Positions 1,806-32,110 of a stretch of DNA of 49,088 nt are shown here, in pieces. The stretch's first letter is position 1; each line of letters starts with the position of its first letter. Source of the stretch: Octopus bimaculoides (Eukaryota); assembly GCF_001194135.2 (NCBI RefSeq), contig NC_068991.1:54167472-54216559 (forward strand), read 5' to 3'. The translations under genes were made by a program, and so were the position numbers. Below the pieces are notes generated by a model. It did not search any database. It saw only the letters and a program-made list of their open reading frames with translations, and was not told the DNA's origin.

Positions 1806-3944
1806 GTGAGAAAGCTGATAAAGGAAAGAAGTTGTTGGGTCGAGGCCGTGGAAGAGGTCGTGGTATAACTGCACCACCTCGAAGTCGTATCATACCAGCA
1901 AATCTTGCTAGTGATTCTCGTAAAGTTGAGTGTACAAGGGATCTGCTTGTTGTAAAGATAGACAATGCTCCAGGTGCTCAAGATGATGTAGAAGTTGAAT
2001 ACTCTGATACCGATAATATTGCATTACGGTCAGTCGGTGGTAGTGGAATTGCTTCAGCTAGCATACCTATTTCATATGATCAGACATCACATTCTATCGT
2101 AAGCTCTCCTTACAGTAAGTCCTGTCCTACATCAGGCTGTGCTCCTGCTGAAAAAATGTGGGATACCATACAGGAGAATTCATGGGACCAGTCTCAGATT
2201 AACCTGCAAAATGGTGACCACCTTCACTGTGGCAATGATGAGGAAGATGACGACGACGAAGATGATGATGATGATGATGATGAAGAGGGTGTTATGCTGG
2301 AAGACGAATATATTGAAGATGGAGAGCTTTACAGTGGTATATATGAAGATGCTGAAAATGAAGCCAATTATGGTCTTGTACATGGCATGGTGGAAGGTGA
2401 GGAATGGGAAGACTGTCCTGATGAGGATGACTTTTGCGTTGAAGATGGTCATCTGGTTTATGATAAGACTGATAAAATACAGGAAACTCTTCGACTTGAC
2501 TGTCAGCTAAATCCTGAAGCCCCGGCTTTTGTTCCCACCTCACCAGATTTTTTGAATGCTCCATCAGAAAATGACAAAACTATCAACCTGGCCTCTATAG
2601 AGCATGCCAAAGAGTCTCTTGTTCAAAATAAGAACAAAAGTGTTCAACTCCCAATTTTGAGTAGCAGCTCAGCTAAAGAATTTTCCGCTAATACTGTTGA
2701 CAAAGATGAGGTCCATGAAAATAAAGTATTAAATGACTCTTCCTCCTTCTCCTCCTCCTCCTTAAATCAAAATCTTTGCAAATCAGATTCTCAGAAAGTT
2801 GTTGAGAATCCTGATAAATTGACTAAGACTGATAACGAAGGATTAAATTGCCATGACAAATGTGAAGATAAAGCTGATGGTGATGCTGTTGATGATAGTG
2901 ATGCTAAATTGGAAGATAGCTCAGAAGCATTTACAAAAAGTTTATCAGATTCAGATAGCCTTGTTCCTGATACAGATATTGAGACCAACAAATTAGAAGA
3001 AACTAATTTAGACCCACTGGCAACAAAATCTGATGAAACTGTTCATAGTCACAATGAACAATCAGCAAATAAGGTAGAGAATTCTGATTCTGAAACCAAA
3101 GTTACTACAGAAACAGTTAGATCTGAAAATGAACATAATTCTAATGAACAAATAGCTAAAGCAGAAAATATAATTAAGGAAACTGATGTAGTTGATAATA
3201 AAGATAGCAAAGAGTTGAAAAGTGAAGATACAGACAGCAAAGAAGATGTAGCATCAAAAAGTGAAGATAGTGAAAAAACCACAGTGCCAAACTCAGAAAC
3301 TGATACGAAAACAGAAATTGTTAATGACCAGGCTTCAGTGTGTAACACTGAAAGCATTGTTGATGAACAGAAAGTAGATGTCAAAATAGAAGACAATATT
3401 TGTAAAGAAGAATTAGATAAATCTGTTGAAGAAAATGTTAGCACTGAATCAACTGAGTTAAGTGAAAACCTTGAGACCAAAACTAGTGGGGAGACAGACG
3501 ATAAAGAGGGAAAAGCACCAGTGAAAGAAGATCAAAGTAAAGCTGACGTTGGAGATAATTCTGAAAACTGTTTGAATGTTACTTCTGATGCTTCAAAGCA
3601 GAGAAATGACAATACTAACAGAGACGTTTTTTATCCAACTGAAGAAGTTTGTGCAGTCACGATCAAAGAAACTTTGCAGACTGTCAAAGATGCTGGTGCT
3701 TGGAAATTAAGTGTCAAAGATGATATTGAAACAGTATCAGTGTACAAGAGTTCCAATGAGTCTAATGCCTCTGATTCCAAAACTGAAGGTGTAGCTGCAG
3801 CAGGTTCTGTCTCCTCCTCCTCCTCCTCTCAAAATCCGTTGAAGGAAACTGTTTCTAATAATCTGCCAGACAGCAATAACCAGTCTGTTAATAATGAATG
3901 CAATGATCTTCACAAGAGCAGCACAGATGAAAAATCGAAAACAG
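1806..3944 (+). CDS. Large internal coding exon (phase 1/1, 713 codons) of a PAM2-motif, RG-repeat, acidic intrinsically disordered protein; gene starts upstream of the window
   Basis: Polypyrimidine tract plus TTTAG acceptor at 1804-1805 and ACAG|GTATTA donor at 3944/3945. The frame is open throughout: (G)EKADKGKKLLGRGRGRGRG...CQLNPEAPAFVP..., a poly-D/E tract and D/E/S/K/T-rich composition. The ORF-track TTG start is not the true start. Confidence 0.85.
2501..2536 (+). other. PAM2 (PABP MLLE-binding) motif CQLNPEAPAFVP
   Basis: Matches the PAM2 consensus xxLNxxAxEFxP at L, N, A, F and P; the usual E before F is A here. Confidence 0.75.
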
Positions 3945-4225
3945 GTATTAAACTTCATTCTTCTACTGTTAACATACATTTTTTCACAATCTCTAAGGCT
4001 ACCATATTTACTTGTGTATAAATCACACTATTTTATACTTGATTTTAACTGGAAAAACTGAGGTGCATCTTATACATGGGGCAAAGCTTAAAGCTATGAA
4101 GGGATCAAATTTTGTATTAAGATTTAACGCAAAATTATGGTGCAACTTATACATGGATAAATACAGTAATTTCTTCTGTCTGCTTAAAATGTTAATCTTC
4201 CATTTGACCATTTCTGTTTTTATAG

Positions 4226-5759: not shown

Positions 5760-6180
5760 TAAGGCAGTGAGCTGGCAGAATTGTTAGCACAGCAAGCAAA
5801 ATGCTTTCATCCGTTTTTACTTTCTGGGTTCAAATTCACCTTTTGGGGTTGGTAAAATAAGTACCAGTTGAGGACTGTTGATGTAATTGACTTACCTCTC
5901 CCACCGAATTTGTTGGCCTTGTGCCAAAATTTGAAACCAAAATATTGTGTAAATTTAAGGTAGCAAGCTGGCAGAATTGTTAGCAACTAGGCGAAATGCT
6001 TAGCAACATTTTGTCTGTGTTTACATTCTGACTTTAAATTCGCCAAAGTTGATTTTGCCTTTCATCCTTTTGGGGTTGATAAAATGAGTACAATTTGAGC
6101 ATTGGGCTTGATGTAATCAACTAACCCTTCCCCCAAAATTGCTGGCCTTGAGCCTAAATTCGAAACCATTATATTGTGTA
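5760..6180 (+). mobile_element. Two head-to-tail copies of SINE family A
   Basis: A ~210-bp unit GGCAGAATTGTTAGCA...GCCTTTCATCCTTT..GG.TCGATAA..AGTACCAG...TGGCCTTG.GCCAAAATTTGAAACCATTATT recurs in more than 15 copies across the window. Confidence 0.85.
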
Positions 6181-7664: not shown

Positions 7665-9180
7665 ATGTGTTTTTATTATTTGCTGAGGTTGACTTTACCT
7701 TTCATCCTTTGGGGGTCGATAAATTAAGTACCAGTTGAACACTGGGGTCGATGTAATCGACATATCCCCTCCCCCAAAATGGCTGCCCTTGTGGCAAAAC
7801 TTGAAATCATTATTATTATGTGAGAAATTATCATTATTATTATTCTTTTCTTATTTATATTATTATTGTTGTTGTTGTTGTTGCAAAAAGACAGTGGATT
7901 GGCAGAATTGTTAGAGCATCAGATAAAATGGCTTGTAATATTTGTTCTGGCTCTTTACATTCTGAGTTCAAATTCTTCTAAGATCAATATTGCCTTTCAT
8001 CCTTTTGAAGTTTATTAAATAAACTATCAGTCAATATTTAAGTGTCAATTTAATTGACTAACCACAGTCCCCTTCAAATTTCTGGCCTTGAGCCTGTGTT
8101 AGAAATAATTATTATTATTAAAGCGATGAGCTGACAAAATGGTTAGCATGCCGGGCAAAATGCATAGCAGCATTTCATTCGTTTTTACATTCTGAGCTCA
8201 AATTCCACTGAGGTCAACTTTGCCTTTCATCCTTTCAAGGTTGATTAAATAAAGTACCAGTTGAACACTGGGGTTGATGTGATCAACTTATCCTCTCCCC
8301 AGAAACTGCTGGCCTTGTGCCAAAACTTGAAATCATCATCATTATTATTATAGTAGAATTTAAAGAGCACCGAACAAGTTGCATTTTACTTTTTTAATAC
8401 ATCCTGCCTTTACATTCTGAATTAAATTCTCTTGGTGATGGGGCAGGGATCAATAAATTAAGTACCAGTTATCATCATCATCATCATCATCATCGTTTAA
8501 CGTCCGCTTTCCATGCTAGCATGGGTTGGACGATTTGACTGAGGACTGGTGAAACCGGATGGCAACACCAGGCTCCAGTCTGATTTGGCAGAGTTTCTAC
8601 AGCTGGATGCCCTTCCTAACGCCAACCACTCAGAGAGTTATGTATTGGAATTAGTGTAATAAAAACCCTCACCACTAAAATTTGTAGCCCTGTGCATATA
8701 TAAGAAATCATCATCATTCTTATTAATATTAAAGGTGACAAACTGACCAAATCATTAGTGTGTTGGACAAAATGCTTAGTGGTATTTATTCTGAATTTAA
8801 ATCCCGCCACGGTCAACTTTGCCTTTCATCCTTTCGGGGCTGATAAAATAAAGTACCAGTCAAGTACTGGGGCTGATGTAATTGGCTTCCACCTCCTCTA
8901 AATTTGCTGGCCTTGTGCCAAACTTTACAGCTATTATTATTATTATTATTAATAAGGTAGCAAGCTAGCAAAATTGTTAGCATGCTGGATAAAATGCTCA
9001 ACAGCATTTCCTCTGGCATTGTTCAGAGTTCACATTCCGCCAAGGTTGATTTTTGCCTTTCATCCTTTTGCGGTTGATAAAATAAGTACCAGTCTAGCAC
9101 TGCGGTCGATGTAATTGACTAACCCCTTCCCCCAAAATTTCTGGGCTTGTGCCTATTGAAGAAAAAATTCTAATTGTTAT
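7665..9180 (+). mobile_element. Train of ~6 head-to-tail family A SINE copies separated by (ATT)n tails
   Basis: Copies at ~7680-7810, 7890-8110, 8120-8345, 8370-8468 (partial), 8735-8940 and 8955-9175. Confidence 0.85.
8470..8638 (-). mobile_element. Young 5'-truncated RTE LINE 3' end with (GAT)n tail, nested in a family A SINE
   Basis: Nearly identical to 28722-28890, which is contiguous with RTE coding sequence. It interrupts the SINE at AGTACCAGTT. Confidence 0.85.
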
Positions 9181-16245: not shown

Positions 16246-16279
16246 NNNNNNNNNNATTATTATTATTATTATTATTATT

Positions 16280-16500
16280 AAAGGCAGCAAGCTGGCAGAA
16301 TTGTTAGTGTGCTGAGAAGAATGCTTTGCAGCATTTCATCTGCCTTTACATTTTGAGTTCAAATTCCACTAAGGTTGACTTTGCCTTTCATCTTTTTGGG
16401 GTCAATAAAGTAAGTACCAGTTGAACGCTAGGGTAAGTGTAATCGGTTTACCCCCCTCCCCAAACTTTCTGGCCTTGTGCCAAAATTTGAAACCATTATT
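16280..16500 (+). mobile_element. SINE family A copy
   Basis: Full-length match to the family A unit, directly after an (ATT)n tract. Confidence 0.85.
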
Positions 16501-16794
16501 AGTATCCTAGGATCTGGATAATATGCCTTGTGGTATGTAATTGCATCCATTTACAATATTAATTTAAACCCTATTGGATCTGACCTTGCTTTTGCTTTCC
16601 ATACTTCTAGCATTGATAAGTTAAACCCTATAACTCCTGAATAATGAATTTACAAAGGACTAAAATATTTGCAGTAACCACCGGGTATCATTGCTTGCAT
16701 GCAATAATGTTATTCAAAGAAATCTTAGAGCTTATACAAGTTTTGAATTTTTGTCATCTTCTCTTTTGGAGTATCAAGAATTATTATATGCATT

Positions 16795-17100
16795 CTATAA
16801 GTACCAGTTGTGTACTGGGTCGATGTAATTGACTTACACCCTCCCTTGAAATTACTGGCCTTGTGCCAAAATTTGAAACCATTATTATTATTTGACAGAA
16901 TCATTAGAACATCGAACAAAATGCTTTGCAGTATTTTTTACCAGCTCTTTACATTCTGAGTTCAAATCTCGCCAAGGTCTACTTTGCTTTTTATCCCACT
17001 GGGGTTGGTAAATTAAAGTACGTGTCAAGTACTGGGGTTGATGATTTCAACTAACCCCCGCAAAACCCTAGAATTTGCTGGCCTAAGTCACAAACAGTTG
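16795..17100 (+). mobile_element. SINE family A: 3' half plus a following full copy
   Basis: AGTACCAGTTG...AAATTTGAAACCATTATT, followed by GACAGAATCATTAGAAC...TTTGCTGGCCT. Confidence 0.75.
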
Positions 17101-22089: not shown

Positions 22090-22450
22090 CTGCTTGACCT
22101 TCACTGAGCTCTCCTCACTCATGAGTTTCTCACCAAAATCAACATGGTATCACTTTTGCACCTGCCCTATTTGCCAGATTTAGCACCTGTGGACTTCCAT
22201 CTCTTCCCCAAGATGAAAATGCAGTTCAAAGGTCACTGTTTTAACATTGTTGTCAAGATTCAGGGTGAATTGCAAAAGTTCCTCAACTCACAGAAAACAT
22301 CCAGGCCATATTCCAAAACTGGCAGCAATGTTGAGACTAGTGTATTGCTGTGCAAGGTGACTATTTTGAAGGAGATGATGTTAAAATTTAGGTAAATAAG
22401 TTATTTTTTTTATCAAACATAGTCCAGAAACCTTTTGATATCACCTTGTA
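22090..22450 (+). mobile_element. Mariner transposase C-terminal relic with right end
   Basis: HLPYLPDLAPVDFHLFPKMK matches the mariner HPPYSPDLAPxD motif. The segment ends ...GATATCACCTTG-TA at a TA dinucleotide. Confidence 0.8.
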
Positions 22451-23150: not shown

Positions 23151-23693
23151 AGCTGATTCATTGTCTTTTCTTTCAATGCCTTCAGGACAAATGCATGCTA
23201 TTCTCTTTAATGTGCTGGCTACCAACGAACGAATTATTTCATGCAAAACTAATCCAGATCAGTTTTAATCAAGGTTTTTATGGCTAAAGTGTTATACACA
23301 TCCATTGTAGCAGTAATCTGGCGTTTATAAAATATTTTCTGCATATTTATGATAGTTTCATAATACAGTCACAGTTTCTATAAGATGCAAAGCAAATTCA
23401 TACATTTTATATACATTTGAAAAATATTTTATTTGAAATGTCCTTTTGACTTTACTCAGTGTAAAAAGCCAGCTTAAAAGGTGATTTAGACAAAACGCCA
23501 TCAAATTTGACAAAAACTATTCACTGTACAAATTATGCATTGATTGGGCTTAAATAAATTCTAGTGGTTGTGCAGAAAAAATAGTTTTATTCACTGAGAA
23601 TTCAGCTCTGTCAGTTGAGTTAACGATAATCTCTTTTTGCCAACCTTTACTTTATCTCCTTTGTTGTCATTTATAAGTCTCTTATCCCCTCAC

Positions 23694-23732
<39 letters not shown>

Positions 23733-23835
23733 GTGTCTCTCCCTTCTCTCTCTACACTCCCCCCTCTCTCTCTCTCTCTCTCTCTGACATCTATTGCACA
23801 CTAGTATCTCGTATTTACTGGCTTGTCTAACAACC

Positions 23836-24021
23836 ATGGACATAAACAAAATGAAAAATAAACTAGCTGAGAAGAAGTACTACTATATCTCACCAACAAC
23901 CAAGAGAAAAATAATTGAGGTGGCCTTCTACTTGGGCTTAATGGCTTTCCTTAGTGTTTTCATGGTGGTGTATTATGTGTTTCTGTATACCCCAAAGAAA
24001 AGGAATATATATCATATGTAA
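23836..24021 (+). CDS. 61-aa single-pass membrane microprotein, InaF-motif-like
   Basis: ACCATGG start and sequence MDINKMKNKLAEKKYYYISPTTKRKIIEVAFYLGLMAFLSVFMVVYYVFLYTPKKRNIYHM*, with a basic N-terminus, a ~23-residue hydrophobic helix and a basic tail. The spacing K-x3-V-x2-Y-x13-YY-x3-(Y/W)-x-P equals the InaF motif as recalled. A (CT)n tract and CTAG acceptor lie at 23803-23804, and an AAG|GTAAGA donor at 24223/24224. Confidence 0.55.
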   Translation: MDINKMKNKLAEKKYYYISPTTKRKIIEVAFYLGLMAFLSVFMVVYYVFLYTPKKRNIYHM

Positions 24022-24489
24022 CCATCTATTCACTGAAAGTGTCATTAATCCACAATTCTTGCACTAGTTTGGTTAGTAATGTACTTTAGGTTATTTAACA
24101 TGCATCAGTTTTGGTGTACATGAACAAACCATAACATGATACATACTTTGTCAAAGATTTTAAAAGACATTTGCTGAGAAGACAAGTACAAAAAGAATTC
24201 TGATGAAAAAAAAATTCAAGAAGGTAAGAATTAGTTTTTGTTTGTTTAATTCACGTTAGATTAAATGAGAATATGTAAATCTATAGTCACATGTGAAAGT
24301 CACATGTGAAAATCACATGACCATGATTCAATGATGTCATAAAAATCTTCAAATCACTTGACTCAGAGCAAAAGGAAGATCTCTTCTTCAGATTCATTTT
24401 CTTTTAGTGATAGAGGAAGATATCATTATCTTCTTATATATTTTGTCTTCTTATATATCTTATCAATATATTACCTCTTTGTTTTTAAT

Positions 24490-24712
24490 ATTGATTTCAA
24501 ATTTTGGCATAAGGCCAGCAGTTTCGGGGAAGAGGGTAAATCAATTGCATCAACCCCAGTATTCAACTGGTACTTATTTTATCAACCCTGAAAAGATGAA
24601 AGGCAAAGTCAACCTTGGCAAAATTTGAACTCAGAACATGAATACAGATGAAATGTTGCTAAGCATTTCACCCAGCATGCTAACAATTCTGCCAGTTCAC
24701 CATCTTCTGCTT
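24490..24712 (-). mobile_element. SINE family A copy (antisense)
   Basis: Reverse complement of the family A unit: TTTCAAATTTTGGCATAAGGCCAGC...GCTAACAATTCTGCCAG. Confidence 0.85.
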
Positions 24713-24735
24713 GTTTTTAATATTATGAAGTCATT

Positions 24736-24948
24736 AAAGGTGGTGCACTAACAGAATCTTTAGCATGGTGGACAAAAGGTTTAGCAGCATTTCATCTGTC
24801 ATTACATTTTGTGTTCATACTCCACCAAGGTCAACTTTGCTTTCTCATCCTTTCAGAGTCAATAAAATAGGTACCAGTTGAGCATTGGTATCAATGTAAA
24901 TGACTTAACCCCTTTCTCCAAACTTGAGCCAAAATTTGAAGCCATTAT
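24736..24948 (+). mobile_element. SINE family A copy (sense), head-to-head with 24490-24712
   Basis: Family A match, separated from the antisense copy by only ~25 bp. Confidence 0.8.
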
Positions 24949-25132
24949 TATCAAATATTGATACTGAATTTTGGTATTCTTAAAGAAAACTAATTGAGAA
25001 TTATTTCTTCTCTGTTTCTCCATGGTGTAGCTTCAATCAATTCTAATCTTCTCTATTAACTGCTGACCTTTATTCCAAGAAAGACTTCCCAATATGCCAA
25101 AAGGAAATTATTGTTCTACAAAGTGACTAAAT

Positions 25133-25335
25133 GAAGGCAGCAAGCTGGCTGACTTGTTAGCATGTTAGACAAAATGCTTAGTGATACTACTTCTGGCTCT
25201 TTACATTCTGAGTTGAAATCCTGCTGAGATCAACTTTGCATTTCATTTCTTTACAGCTAATAAAATAAAGTACCAATCAAGTACTGAAGTCAATGTAATC
25301 AGCTTGTTTCCTCCCCTTAAAAATTGCTCTCCTTG
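25133..25335 (+). mobile_element. SINE family A copy
   Basis: GGCAGCAAGCTGGC...CTTTACATTCTGAGTTGAAATCC...AAGTACC... Confidence 0.75.
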
Positions 25336-28721: not shown

Positions 28722-29505
28722 CATCATCATCATCATCATCATCGATTAACGTCCGCTTTCCATGCTAGCATGGGTTGGACGATTTGACTGAGGACTGGTG
28801 AAACCGGATGGCAACACCAGGCTCCAATCTAAATTTGGCAGAGTTTCTACAGCTGGATGCCCTTCCTAACGCCAACCACTCAGAGAGTGTAGTAGGTGCT
28901 TTTACGTGTCACCTGCACGAAGGCCAGTCAGGCGATACTGGCAATGGCCACGCTCAAAATGGTGTCTTTTATGTGCCACNNNNNNNNNNNNNNNNNNNNN
29001 NNNNNNNNNNNNNNNNNNNNNNNNNNNNNNNNNNNNNNNNNNNNNNNNNNNNNNNNNNNNNNNNNNNNNNNNNNNNNNNNNNNNNNNNNNNNNNNNNNNN
29101 NNNNNNNNNNNNNNNNNNNNNNNNNNNNNNNNNNNNNNNNNNNNNNNNNNNNNNNNNNNNNNNNNNNNTGGCAACGATCTTACTTGGCTTGCTGGGTCTT
29201 CTCATGCACAGCACATTTCCAAAGGTCTCGGTCAGTAGTCATCGCCTCGGTGAGGCCCAATGTATGAAGGTCTTGCCTCACCACCTCAGCCCAGGTCTTC
29301 CTGGGCCTACCTCTTCCACGGGTTCCCTCAACTGTTAGGGTGTGGCACTTTTTCACACAGCTATCCTCATCCATTCTCACCACATGTCCATACCAGCGCA
29401 ATCGTCTCTCTTGCACACCACAACTGATGCTTCTAATGTTCAGCTTTTCTCTCAAGATACTTACACTCTGACGGGTATTCACATTGACATTACACATCCA
29501 TGTTA
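28722..29505 (-). mobile_element. 5'-truncated RTE LINE (ORF C-terminus, 3'UTR and (GAT)n tail; contains a gap)
   Basis: RRLRWYGHVVRMDEDSCVKK...EGTRGRGRPRKTW...DRDLW is the typical RTE C-terminal signature. The tail is inserted into a (TA)n tract. Confidence 0.9.
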
Positions 29506-29760
29506 AATATATATTTTTTTTAACCAAAAATTTGGTAAAAAATATAGTATCTGTTAACAATCTTAGCAAAAAACTCACAGTTGAGTTTTTGTATATATAT
29601 CCTATATTTTATAATATGATATAATATTTTATGATATGTATTAATCATTCTGGATGTTCTATCGAAATGTACATAGGTCTATTTCATTATTATTATTATT
29701 ATTATTGTTGTTGTAATAAAGTATTTTCAACGGATCAATTTTGACCTCTATTTAAAGTTG

Positions 29761-30632: not shown

Positions 30633-30880
30633 GTATTATTATTATTATTATTGTTGTTGTTGTTGTTGGTGGTGGGGGTGGGGGTGTTGTTGTTGTTGTC
30701 GTCGTCGTCGTCGTCGTCGTCGTGGTGGTGGTGGTGGTGGTGGTGGNNNNNNNNNNNNNNNNNNNNNNNNNNNNNNNNNNNNNNNNNNNNNNNNNNNNNN
30801 NNNNNNNNNNNNNNNNNNNNNNNNNNNNNNNNNNNNNNNNNNNNTGGTGGTGGTGGTGGTGGTGGTGGTGGTGGTGGTGG
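30633..30880. repeat. Compound trinucleotide microsatellite (TAT/TGT/CGT/GGT) spanning a gap
   Basis: Directly visible. Confidence 0.95.
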
Positions 30881-31118
30881 GAGAAATGTATAGCAGTATT
30901 TCGTCTGCTACTACGTTCTGAGTTCAAATTCTACCAAGTTTGACTTTGCCTTTCATCCTTTTGGGGTTGATGAAATAAGTACCGGTCAAGTGCTGTGGTC
31001 AATGTAATCAGCTAGTCCCCTCCCCTAAATTTCAGGTGTTGTGCTTATAGTAGAAAGAATTATTATTATTATTATTATTATCATTATTATTATTATCATT
31101 ATTATTATTATTATTATA
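30880..31118 (+). mobile_element. SINE family A copy with long (ATT)n tail
   Basis: TTCTGAGTTCAAATTC...GCCTTTCATCCTTTGGGG..., followed by (ATT)n. Confidence 0.8.
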
Positions 31119-31214: not shown

Positions 31215-32110
31215 GGGATTATATAGACAACATATTTTTTAGGATATGAGCACTATTTTTTTAATTTCTTCCATTTTTGGATTTCCTGTTATCTGTGACG
31301 GGTAGCAATCAACCACTTTTGTTATCGTTCCTAGGGTACATATGACAACAGGTATTGTTTTAATCTTGAGATTCCACATTTTGCCAATTTCTATTTCAAG
31401 ATCTTTATACTTGCTCAGTTTTTTGGTAGGTCTTGACAGATACATTTATGTTGATTGGGACAGTCACATCGATGAGGAGGCATGAATTTTGTCTGACATC
31501 CTTCAATATAATGTCTGATCTATTTGCATTTATCTTTCTGTCAGTTTGAACAGAAAAGTTCCAAAGGAGTGAGATATGATCATTTTCAAGCATTGGAGGT
31601 GGTTTGTGTTCCCACCAGTTTTTATTAAGGGGGAGGTCCAAGTCTTTGCAAATTATCCAGTGAATATACTGTGTTGCCCTATCATGCATGTTGAGATACT
31701 CTGTAGGTGCAAGAAGACTGCACATGGAGACAACATGATCAATGGTTTCATTTTGTTGTTTACATACACAACATGTTGGACTACTGCTGTTCTTTAACAT
31801 GTTGATCAGGTAGCTTCTTGTAGGTAGGCATTGATCTTGAACTGCTATGATAAACCCTCCTGTTTCTGATTTTAAGCCAGAAGACACTAACCATTGATGG
31901 GTAAGGGCTTAGTCAACATCAGCATTATTAGTTTTCTTTGGGTATTTGCTATTGAGAGGTTTTTCTTGCCATTTATCAGTAAGCATATCTAAAGCAGCAG
32001 TTTTAGCAAGGGTTGTCATGTGCTTAGCTTTTTCTGTGCTTGTTTTCACTATGTCTAATTCTGAGATTTGCCGTATTTGGAAATCACTAAGATTTATAAT
32101 TATTGTTGTT
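31215..32110 (-). mobile_element. R4/Dong-like non-LTR retrotransposon C-terminus (CCHC knuckle plus restriction-like endonuclease), frameshifted
   Basis: LKSETGGFIIAVQDQ, CCVCKQQNETIDHVVSMC, NRSDII...LIDVTVP and KYKDLEIEIGKMW...IPVVICTLG motifs occur in order. Confidence 0.85.

What the first reader, a model, noticed from the sequence alone, without database searches (positions are those of the whole stretch)
23805..24223. Unannotated-size InaF-like membrane microprotein: candidate TRP-channel regulator in a cephalopod
Seen: a 61-aa ORF with an ideal ACCATGG start, one TM helix flanked by basic residues and no microsatellite content, inside an apparent exon (CTAG acceptor 23804, AAG|GTAAGA donor 24224). 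Its core KRKIIEVAFYLGLMAFLSVFMVVYYVFLYTP aligns ungapped to the InaF motif as I recall it ([32 protein letters not shown] in INAFM2): V, Y, VYY and P are identical and R/K, W/Y and most hydrophobics are conservative, but the SLAA core is diverged. Known: Drosophila InaF proteins are needed for normal TRP channel levels in rhabdomeric photoreceptors, and cephalopod photoreceptors are rhabdomeric with a Gq/PLC/TRP cascade. Inference: a divergent InaF-family sORF that gene predictors would likely miss.
Basis: partly seen in the sequence, partly recalled or inferred. Interest (0 to 1): 0.78.

Follow-up and report, generated by a model that had tools for sequence, protein, structure and literature searches.

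The report
Cephalopod InaF-family membrane microprotein gene
The 61-codon reading frame is a real, evolutionarily conserved gene for a tiny single-pass membrane protein of the InaF family (helpers of TRP ion channels in fly eyes), with expressed relatives in cuttlefish; it is a new member of a known family, and its proposed role in cephalopod vision is untested.

Summary
The ORF is there: ATG 23836 to TAA 24019-24021, + strand, 61 aa, ACCATGG start. It has one hydrophobic helix (aa 26-51) between basic flanks.

It is not a chance ORF. A search of 1.84 billion proteins gave one true relative, a 77-aa protein (E 2.3e-6) from poly(A) RNA-seq of Sepia esculenta larvae. A 79-aa relative lies on an unidentified 238-kb genomic contig. 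An HMM built only from those two picks this ORF alone among 1,481 window ORFs (56 bits; next 7; shuffles at most 14.7).

Both relatives pass Pfam's InaF-motif threshold (25.9 and 29.2 vs 21.8 bits). The window ORF has InaF as top hit but falls below it (17.9 bits), in the same alignment register. None of 120 shuffles hit InaF.

Purifying selection is clear: dN/dS is about 0.13, all 5 CDS differences between two Sepia species are synonymous, and the CDS has only one in-frame indel while the flanks are full of gaps.

In decapodiforms the mRNA is collinear with genomic DNA, with no intron next to the CDS.

TRP-channel regulation is inferred from family membership only. Verdict: new member of a known kind, of moderate interest.

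The parts
23836..24021 (+). Coding sequence of the 61-aa microprotein (ATG 23836, stop TAA 24019-24021)
   Evidence: It is the only one of 1,481 window ORFs matched by an HMM built from the two decapodiform proteins (56.1 bits, E 3e-16). phmmer E 2.3e-6 to P0002 over 1.84e9 proteins.
23833..23839 (+). Start context ACCATGG (A at -3, G at +4)
   Evidence: A at -3 is also present at the Sepia (L001) and L004 start codons.
23839..23910 (+). N-terminal, probably cytosolic, basic region (aa 2-25, net charge +6). It holds residues conserved outside the membrane helix (D2, K9, P20).
   Evidence: Alignment A1, BLASTP alignment covering aa 2-55, charge count, low-confidence helix at aa 3-13.
23911..23997 (+). 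InaF-motif / transmembrane helix (aa 26-54)
   Evidence: Pfam PF15018 matches aa 26-54 to model positions 6-34 of 35, the same register as P0002 aa 38-67 to positions 5-34. Hydropathy peak 2.25. AF2 helix at aa 20-51, block-mean pLDDT 86-94 over aa 21-50. Invariant V29, Y32, L33, G34, M36, A37, L39, S40, F42, V44, Y46, Y47, F49, T52, P53 across the three proteins.
23998..24018 (+). Short basic C-terminal tail (KRNIYHM, after TPK). The helix ends 10 residues before the C-terminus.
   Evidence: K55 is invariant; the rest of the tail is not conserved.
23689..23785 (.). (CT)n microsatellite 50 nt upstream of the ATG.
   Evidence: TRF; sequence. Its role is undetermined.
23801..23804 (+). Claimed splice acceptor (CTAG); present but unverified
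   Evidence: The decapodiform relatives have no intron between 5'UTR and CDS.
24221..24229 (+). Claimed splice donor AAG|GTAAGA, 202 nt after the stop; present but unverified
   Evidence: 2 copies in the window against 0.63 expected. Looser donor-like motifs are common. The Sepia 3'UTR is collinear with L005 for about 390 nt.
24486..24950 (.). Inverted pair of a ~210-nt interspersed (SINE-like) repeat that bounds the unique sequence downstream of the ORF
   Evidence: at least 12 copies in the window at about 70-82% identity, none in L004 or L005.

Best explanation
The ORF at 23836-24021 is a functional protein-coding microgene. It is probably the octopod-lineage orthologue of a 77-79-aa cephalopod protein that belongs to the InaF-motif family (Pfam PF15018, 'TRP-interacting helix').

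The product is a 61-aa single-pass membrane protein. It has a basic N-terminal segment of about 25 aa, probably cytosolic. Its membrane helix is itself the InaF motif. Its basic C-terminal tail is only 10 aa.

Because the helix lies so close to the C-terminus of so short a chain, the protein must be inserted after translation, like a tail-anchored protein (inference).

By analogy with Drosophila INAF-B (81 aa) and vertebrate INAFM2/ROME, its most likely action is helix-to-helix association in the membrane with a TRP/TRPC-type cation channel. It would then act as a small auxiliary subunit that stabilises or tunes the channel.

Shown: the ORF, its helix, its homology, purifying selection, and transcription of the cuttlefish relative. 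Inferred: topology, insertion route, TRP binding and any role in photoreceptors.
For: 1. Homology. phmmer over 1.84e9 representative proteins finds one true relative, P0002 (77 aa, E 2.3e-6). Pairwise BLASTP gives 39% identity and 69% positives over 54 aa, extending outside the helix.
2. Independent test. An HMM from P0002 and P0004 alone scores this ORF at 56.1 bits (E 3e-16). The next of 1,481 window ORFs scores 7 bits. 2,000 segment-wise shuffles reach at most 14.7 bits.
3. Family. P0002 scores 25.9 bits and P0004 29.2 bits on PF15018 (cut-off 21.8), and InaF is their only hit. The window ORF has InaF as top hit at 17.9 bits, in the same register. 0 of 120 composition-preserving shuffles hit InaF at E<=0.1.
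4. Selection.
- dN/dS is about 0.13 between the Sepia and L004 CDS.
- All 5 CDS differences between two Sepia species are synonymous third-position changes, while the transcripts differ by about 6% overall.
- The motif region is 80% identical at DNA level without indels. The flanks are 54-68% identical with 15-113 gap positions per block.
- Window and decapodiform loci share no detectable non-coding similarity, yet the ORF is preserved.
5. Expression of the relative. Contigs of about 1.2 kb occur in 46 blocks of the collection. Two of the runs are published poly(A) RNA-seq of S. esculenta larvae.
6. Structure. One long helix at aa 20-51, block-mean pLDDT 86-94 over aa 21-50; hydropathy peak 2.25.
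7. Family function. INAF-B is an 81-aa single-pass protein that co-localises with and binds TRP; null mutants retain about 5-10% of TRP protein (PMC3433705). INAFM2/ROME co-immunoprecipitates with TRPC1 and is a single-exon gene (PMC13012068).
Against: - The window ORF alone does not reach Pfam's gathering score (17.9 vs 21.8 bits).
- Hits of that strength to some TM family occur in 2 of 60 shuffles, so membership rests on the transitive link through P0002 and P0004.
- The motif is short and largely hydrophobic, so convergence cannot be fully excluded.
- No transcript, peptide or orthologue from the window's own species or any close relative was available.
- The exact protein, and anything closer than the P0002 cluster, is absent from the protein collections.
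- The Sepia transcripts come from whole larvae, so nothing ties the gene to retina.
- In human cells TRPC1 protein level did not depend on ROME, so the fly mechanism is not universal.
- This protein lacks ROME's long extracellular domain.
Confidence: 0.72

Rival explanations
1. It is a conserved cephalopod-specific single-pass microprotein whose likeness to the InaF motif is convergent or compositional. Its function would then have nothing to do with TRP channels.
For: The window ORF is below the Pfam cut-off and also gives weak hits to TMEM128, FixQ and a holin family. Shuffles reach similar E-values with other TM families. The phmmer search found no canonical InaF protein at E<=0.001. The motif is only about 30 residues and mostly hydrophobic.
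Against: Both relatives pass the curated threshold with InaF as their only hit. 0 of 120 shuffles hit InaF. The three Pfam alignments share one register covering 29-30 of 35 model positions. Size and architecture match INAF-B.
Confidence: 0.15
2. It is a silent or recently inactivated copy (pseudogene or retrocopy) in this species. The ORF would be intact but no longer expressed or translated.
For: No expression evidence for this species. No octopod-type homologue appears in protein collections that include transcriptome-derived ORFs. The locus is embedded in repeats: a mariner remnant 1.5 kb upstream and SINE-like copies 0.5 kb downstream. The decapodiform gene is intronless, so a retrocopy could not be told apart by structure.
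Against: The ORF is intact, with start and stop aligned to those of its relatives. All motif residues invariant between the two decapodiform proteins that could be compared are retained or conservatively replaced. It has a good start context. It is the only copy in the window. pN of about 0.37 with saturated synonymous sites means long-term constraint.
Confidence: 0.09
3. It is a chance ORF in AT-rich non-coding DNA.
For: The window has 1,481 stop-to-stop ORFs of at least 20 aa, many of them hydrophobic. The ACCATGG 7-mer is not over-represented.
Against: Database-wide E 2.3e-6 to a protein of the same architecture. 56 bits against at most 14.7 bits for shuffles. Similarity extends outside the helix.
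Confidence: 0.02

Closest known systems
Drosophila INAF-B (inaF locus; Cheng & Nash 2007, as summarised in PMC3433705)
   Same: A very small (81 aa vs 61 aa) single-pass integral membrane protein whose helix carries the InaF motif. It was also first overlooked because the ORF is so short. Both come from animals with rhabdomeric, PLC/TRP-based photoreceptors (the cephalopod side is established knowledge, not tested here).
   Different: Sequence similarity is confined to the motif of about 30 aa, and the window ORF is below the Pfam cut-off. The fly locus encodes four InaF proteins that share a 3'UTR (PMC4528330); only one InaF ORF is found here and in L004. TRP binding, INAD binding and eye enrichment are shown for the fly protein and not for this one.
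Vertebrate INAFM2 / ROME (and INAFM1)
   Same: InaF motif equals the transmembrane helix. The N-terminus is intracellular. The gene is single-exon, as the decapodiform relatives appear to be. It associates with TRPC1 (PMC13012068).
   Different: ROME is 153 aa with a 97-aa glycosylated extracellular domain and beta-catenin/Wnt functions. The cephalopod protein has only 10 residues after the helix. TRPC1 levels do not depend on ROME.
Cephalopod 77-79-aa InaF-motif proteins P0002 (Sepia esculenta; identical protein in a second Sepia-like sample, L005) and P0004 (unidentified 238-kb ENA contig)
   Same: True homologues, probably orthologues. 37-40% identity, the same architecture, 20 invariant positions, and A at -3 of the start codon.
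   Different: The window protein lacks the first 14 residues and has a shorter, unrelated C-tail. There is no DNA similarity outside the CDS.

Membership tests
InaF-motif family (Pfam PF15018) | The sequence itself matches the InaF-motif profile at or above the curated gathering score (21.8 bits) | tested here: inconclusive
   17.9 bits, E 0.0032. InaF is the top hit and covers model positions 6-34 of 35, but it is below the cut-off. 2 of 60 shuffles reach that E-value with some other TM family; none does so with InaF.
InaF-motif family (Pfam PF15018) | Significant homology to proteins that do pass the profile threshold (transitive membership) | tested here: met
   P0002 scores 25.9 bits and P0004 29.2 bits, with InaF their only hit. 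Window ORF to P0002: E 2.3e-6 database-wide. 56.1 bits against an HMM of P0002 and P0004. All Pfam alignments share the same register.
InaF-motif family (Pfam PF15018) | Single-pass integral membrane protein in which the motif coincides with the transmembrane helix | tested here: met
   Hydropathy peak 2.25 centred on aa 35; a single hydrophobic segment at aa 26-51. AF2 helix at aa 20-51, block-mean pLDDT 86-94 over aa 21-50. The Pfam match spans aa 26-54.
   Y46, Y47, T52 and P53 are invariant in the three cephalopod proteins, and the decapodiform ones read IYYAFIWTP. The reference motif was recalled from memory and could not be retrieved: Cheng & Nash 2007 is not held.
INAF-type TRP auxiliary subunits (functional class) | Physical association with a TRP/TRPC channel and an effect on its level or gating | not testable with these tools
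   Known for INAF-B and ROME-TRPC1. No data exist for any cephalopod protein.
INAF-type TRP auxiliary subunits (functional class) | Expression in photoreceptors or other TRP-expressing cells | not testable with these tools
   The only expression evidence is poly(A) RNA-seq of whole S. esculenta larvae. There is no tissue resolution and no data for the window's species.

The most novel reading that the evidence does not exclude
Coleoid cephalopods carry a fast-evolving, minimal (61-79 aa), tail-anchored InaF-B-like subunit that partners the rhabdomeric TRP channel in retina, and possibly in skin or sucker light-sensing cells. The INAF-TRP partnership would then be an ancestral protostome component of rhabdomeric phototransduction, one that genome annotations have missed.
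Probability: 0.3. Interest if true: 0.55.

Novelty: new member of a known kind. Interest (0 to 1): 0.4.

Why it matters
Auxiliary subunits of TRP channels are few. InaF is one of the best genetic examples, yet its mechanism is still unknown even in flies.

A minimal 61-aa version, little more than the motif helix plus a basic N-terminus, would define the smallest functional unit of the family. It would also provide a candidate missing component for reconstituting cephalopod phototransduction channels.

It is also a clean example of a conserved microprotein gene that standard annotation appears to have missed. The find is not surprising to a specialist, however, because the motif was already known to run from flies and worms to humans.

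Tried and rejected
- Word-indexed homology searches added nothing beyond P0002 and P0004. The ORF alone gave no hits, P0002 as query returned only itself and P0004, and the 3-sequence profile gave nothing new.
- Exact look-ups of the 61-aa ORF and of the 75-aa TTG-start version found nothing on record.
- The JGI metagenome scan with the family profile gave 599 pattern matches and no relative.
- The PDB profile search gave only chance hits to BAP31 at E about 2, so no solved relative exists.
- Rfam gave no hit and ARAGORN found no tRNA in the window.
- P0001 and P0003 from phmmer are long tandem-repeat proteins whose scores sum weak repeats. I rejected them as spurious.
- P0005 (152 aa) is the same Sepia-type protein with the 5'UTR read through in frame, which is a gene-caller artefact.
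- The apparent synteny hit (window 22099-22230 vs L004 609-740) looks like a shared mariner-type transposase remnant, not a conserved neighbour. That reading rests on motif recall; Pfam gave no hit on the 83-aa fragment.
- The second 61-aa ORF in the Sepia 3'UTR is not conserved in L004, so I rejected it.
- No second InaF-like ORF exists in the window or in L004, so there is no fly-style multi-InaF locus.
- Cheng & Nash 2007 could not be read.
- Accessions ERR12408771 and ERZ21867824 could not be tied to an organism.

Full report
**1. What is in the sequence**

The window is draft eukaryotic DNA. It is 17-41% G+C in 2-kb windows, holds 2,987 N in assembly gaps, and carries many microsatellites and interspersed repeats.

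At the reported place there is an ORF from ATG 23836 to TAA 24019-24021 on the + strand. It encodes MDINKMKNKLAEKKYYYISPTTKRKIIEVAFYLGLMAFLSVFMVVYYVFLYTPKKRNIYHM, 61 aa.

- The start sits in ACCATGG (23833-23839), the only copy on the + strand. The 7-mer itself is not enriched in the window.
- The product has one hydrophobic stretch, aa 26-51 (Kyte-Doolittle maximum 2.25). It lies between a basic N-terminal part (net +6) and a 10-residue basic tail (+3).
- AlphaFold2, run on a three-sequence alignment, models one long helix at aa 20-51 (block-mean pLDDT 86-94 over aa 21-50). A short low-confidence helix lies at aa 3-13.
- A (CT)n array at 23689-23785 lies just upstream.

**2. Is it more than chance?**

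Yes. HMMER against 1.84 billion representative proteins returned three hits.

- Two are 1,000-aa tandem-repeat proteins whose scores are sums of weak repeats. I discard them.
- The third, P0002, is a 77-aa protein with the same layout. Its database-wide E-value is 2.3e-6, with 39% identity and 69% positives over 54 aa.
- The alignment starts at residue 2 and runs through the helix to the TP-K after it, so it is not merely a match of two hydrophobic segments.
- P0002 has a 79-aa relative, P0004, at 68% identity.

An HMM built only from P0002 and P0004, and therefore independent of the window, was searched against all 1,481 stop-to-stop ORFs of the window. It scored this ORF at 56.1 bits (E 3e-16) and nothing else above 7 bits. 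Two thousand shuffles that keep the composition of the N-part, helix and tail separately reached at most 14.7 bits.

**3. Where the relatives come from**

P0002 is encoded on contigs of about 1.2 kb in 46 blocks of the Logan assemblies.

- Two of the runs, SRR19578110 and SRR20545814, are published poly(A)-selected RNA-seq of whole larvae of the golden cuttlefish Sepia esculenta (PMC10141105, PMC9538352).
- The contigs from three samples start and end within a few bases of each other. They carry AATAAA about 20 nt from the 3' end.
- They therefore look like a full-length mRNA: 463-nt 5'UTR, 234-nt CDS, about 545-nt 3'UTR.
- A 2.4-kb contig from another run (L005, ERR12408771, organism not identified) is 93.7% identical to this mRNA in one uninterrupted block and encodes the identical protein.
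- P0004 lies on a 238-kb contig of an ENA assembly (L004). I could not identify its organism. Its roughly 70% DNA identity to Sepia suggests another decapodiform.

The window shares no non-coding similarity with these loci. It also carries an abundant ~210-nt interspersed repeat that they lack. This fits a distant cephalopod lineage. From my own knowledge the repeat resembles the common Octopus SINE, which I did not test.

**4. Selection**

- Sepia against L004: 32 synonymous and 30 non-synonymous differences over 50 and 181 sites. That gives dN 0.19 and dS 1.4, so omega is about 0.13; dS is near saturation, so this is approximate.
- The two Sepia-type sequences differ at 5 CDS positions. All are third positions and all are synonymous, while the transcripts differ by about 6% overall. 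With about 22% of sites synonymous, five of five by chance is roughly 5e-4 (my arithmetic).
- In a global alignment of the locus, the motif-coding part is 80% identical with no indel, and the whole CDS has a single 6-nt in-frame indel. The flanks are 54-68% identical with 15-113 gap positions per block.
- Window against decapodiforms: pN is 0.36-0.38 with synonymous sites saturated. Start, helix and stop still align.

**5. Family**

Pfam gives InaF-motif (PF15018, 'TRP-interacting helix') as the top hit for the window ORF. It scores 17.9 bits, below the gathering score of 21.8. Weaker hits to unrelated single-helix families follow.

On its own this would not convince. Of 60 composition-preserving shuffles of the ORF, two reached an equal E-value with some other membrane family. 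Three observations make the case:

- P0002 and P0004 pass the threshold at 25.9 and 29.2 bits, and InaF is their only hit.
- None of the 120 shuffles of the ORF or of P0002 hit InaF, even at E 0.1.
- The Pfam alignments are in one register. Window aa 26-54 map to model positions 6-34, and P0002 aa 38-67 map to positions 5-34. This agrees with the direct alignment of the two proteins.

I therefore file the ORF as a divergent member of the family by transitive homology, and I note that it fails the threshold by itself.

**6. Gene structure**

The Sepia mRNA is collinear with L005 over positions 1-1088. L005 is in turn collinear with the genomic contig L004 over about 1.3 kb, spanning upstream sequence, 5'UTR, CDS and about 100 nt of 3'UTR.

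So the decapodiform gene has no intron next to the CDS. Human INAFM2 is likewise described as a single-exon gene (PMC13012068).

The exact 9-mer AAGGTAAGA is rare: 2 copies in the window against 0.63 expected. It was chosen after the fact, and looser donor-like motifs are frequent.

I cannot exclude that it is used. In Drosophila, INAF-B is encoded in the first exon of a spliced transcript. Only transcript data from the source species can decide.

Candidate 3' ends are an ATTAAA at 24260 and the start of repeat DNA at about 24486.

**7. How it most likely works**

*Shown:*
- a conserved 61-aa protein with one membrane helix that is the InaF motif.

*Established for the family:*
- INAF-B (81 aa) is a single-pass membrane protein that co-localises with and binds TRP in the rhabdomere.
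- The two proteins need each other for stability; null mutants keep about 5-10% of TRP protein with normal mRNA (PMC3433705).
- INAFM2/ROME binds TRPC1 and dampens Ca2+ responses, and mouse INAFM2 appears in native TRPC interactomes (PMC13012068).

*Inferred here:*
- The cephalopod protein docks through its helix onto a TRP/TRPC channel in the membrane and acts as a small auxiliary subunit.
- The more basic N-terminus faces the cytosol, by the positive-inside rule and as reported for ROME.
- A 61-aa chain whose helix ends 10 residues from the C-terminus cannot expose the helix before termination. Insertion must therefore be post-translational, in the manner of tail-anchored proteins.

Nothing here ties the gene to retina. 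The Sepia data come from whole larvae.

**8. Comparison and novelty**

- The closest known proteins are Drosophila INAF-B (same size class and architecture) and vertebrate INAFM1/2 (same motif, much longer extracellular part).
- The fly locus encodes four InaF proteins. Only one InaF ORF is found in this window and in L004.
- The held literature has no mention of InaF in cephalopods.
- P0002 and P0004 carry no name in any source.
- The window protein is absent from a collection of about 15 billion proteins that includes NCBI annotation.

This is a new member of a known family. It is a useful annotation and a reasonable lead for cephalopod TRP biology. It is not a surprise, since the motif was already known from flies and worms to humans.

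**9. Verdict**

Interest is moderate at 0.4.

Noticed in passing
window 1832-4021 (+): A 729-aa uninterrupted ORF, by far the longest in the window. It has an N-terminal GRGRGRGRG run, a long acidic D/E tract and the peptide QLNPEAPAFVPTS. That peptide gives a sub-threshold Pfam PAM2 (PABP-interacting motif) hit at 16.2 vs 20 bits. It is probably a large coding exon of a neighbouring gene about 20 kb upstream of the microprotein.
   Followed up: partly
window 22099-22395 (+); L004 446-1639 (-): A remnant that looks like a mariner/Tc1-type transposase (…PYLPDLAPVDFHLFPKMK…). It gives a tblastx match (45% over 44 aa) to a transposase-like gene near the InaF gene in L004. I read it as a shared transposon family, not conserved synteny, because the relative orientation differs. 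Pfam gave no hit on the 83-aa fragment.
   Followed up: partly
window 29180-29578 (-) and 31405-31887 (-): Reverse-transcriptase C-terminal remnants of non-LTR retrotransposons. The second scores 27.2 bits on Pfam zf-RVT (cut-off 27.5). They are separated by assembly gaps.
   Followed up: partly
window 24486-24950, plus copies at about 5835-6172, 7679-8335, 8728-9153, 16257-17043, 25145-25299 and 30875-31008: A ~210-nt SINE-like interspersed repeat at 70-82% identity, in at least 12 copies. One inverted pair lies immediately downstream of the microprotein ORF. It is absent from the decapodiform loci L004 and L005.
   Followed up: partly
L005 1092-1377 vs L004 9288-9572: A conserved non-coding block (72% identity) spans the apparent transcription start of the Sepia mRNA (L001 position 1 = L005 1298). 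It may be a conserved core promoter and 5'UTR start of the decapodiform InaF microgene. No counterpart is detectable in the window.
   Followed up: no
L001 872-1057 (+), also in L002 and L003: A second 61-aa ORF was called in the 3'UTR of the Sepia transcript. It has no Pfam hit, and that part of the transcript is not alignable to L004. It is probably spurious.
   Followed up: partly
window 24287-24335: A short imperfect tandem repeat (GTCACATGTGAAA x3), about 60 nt after the claimed splice donor. Its significance is unknown.
   Followed up: no
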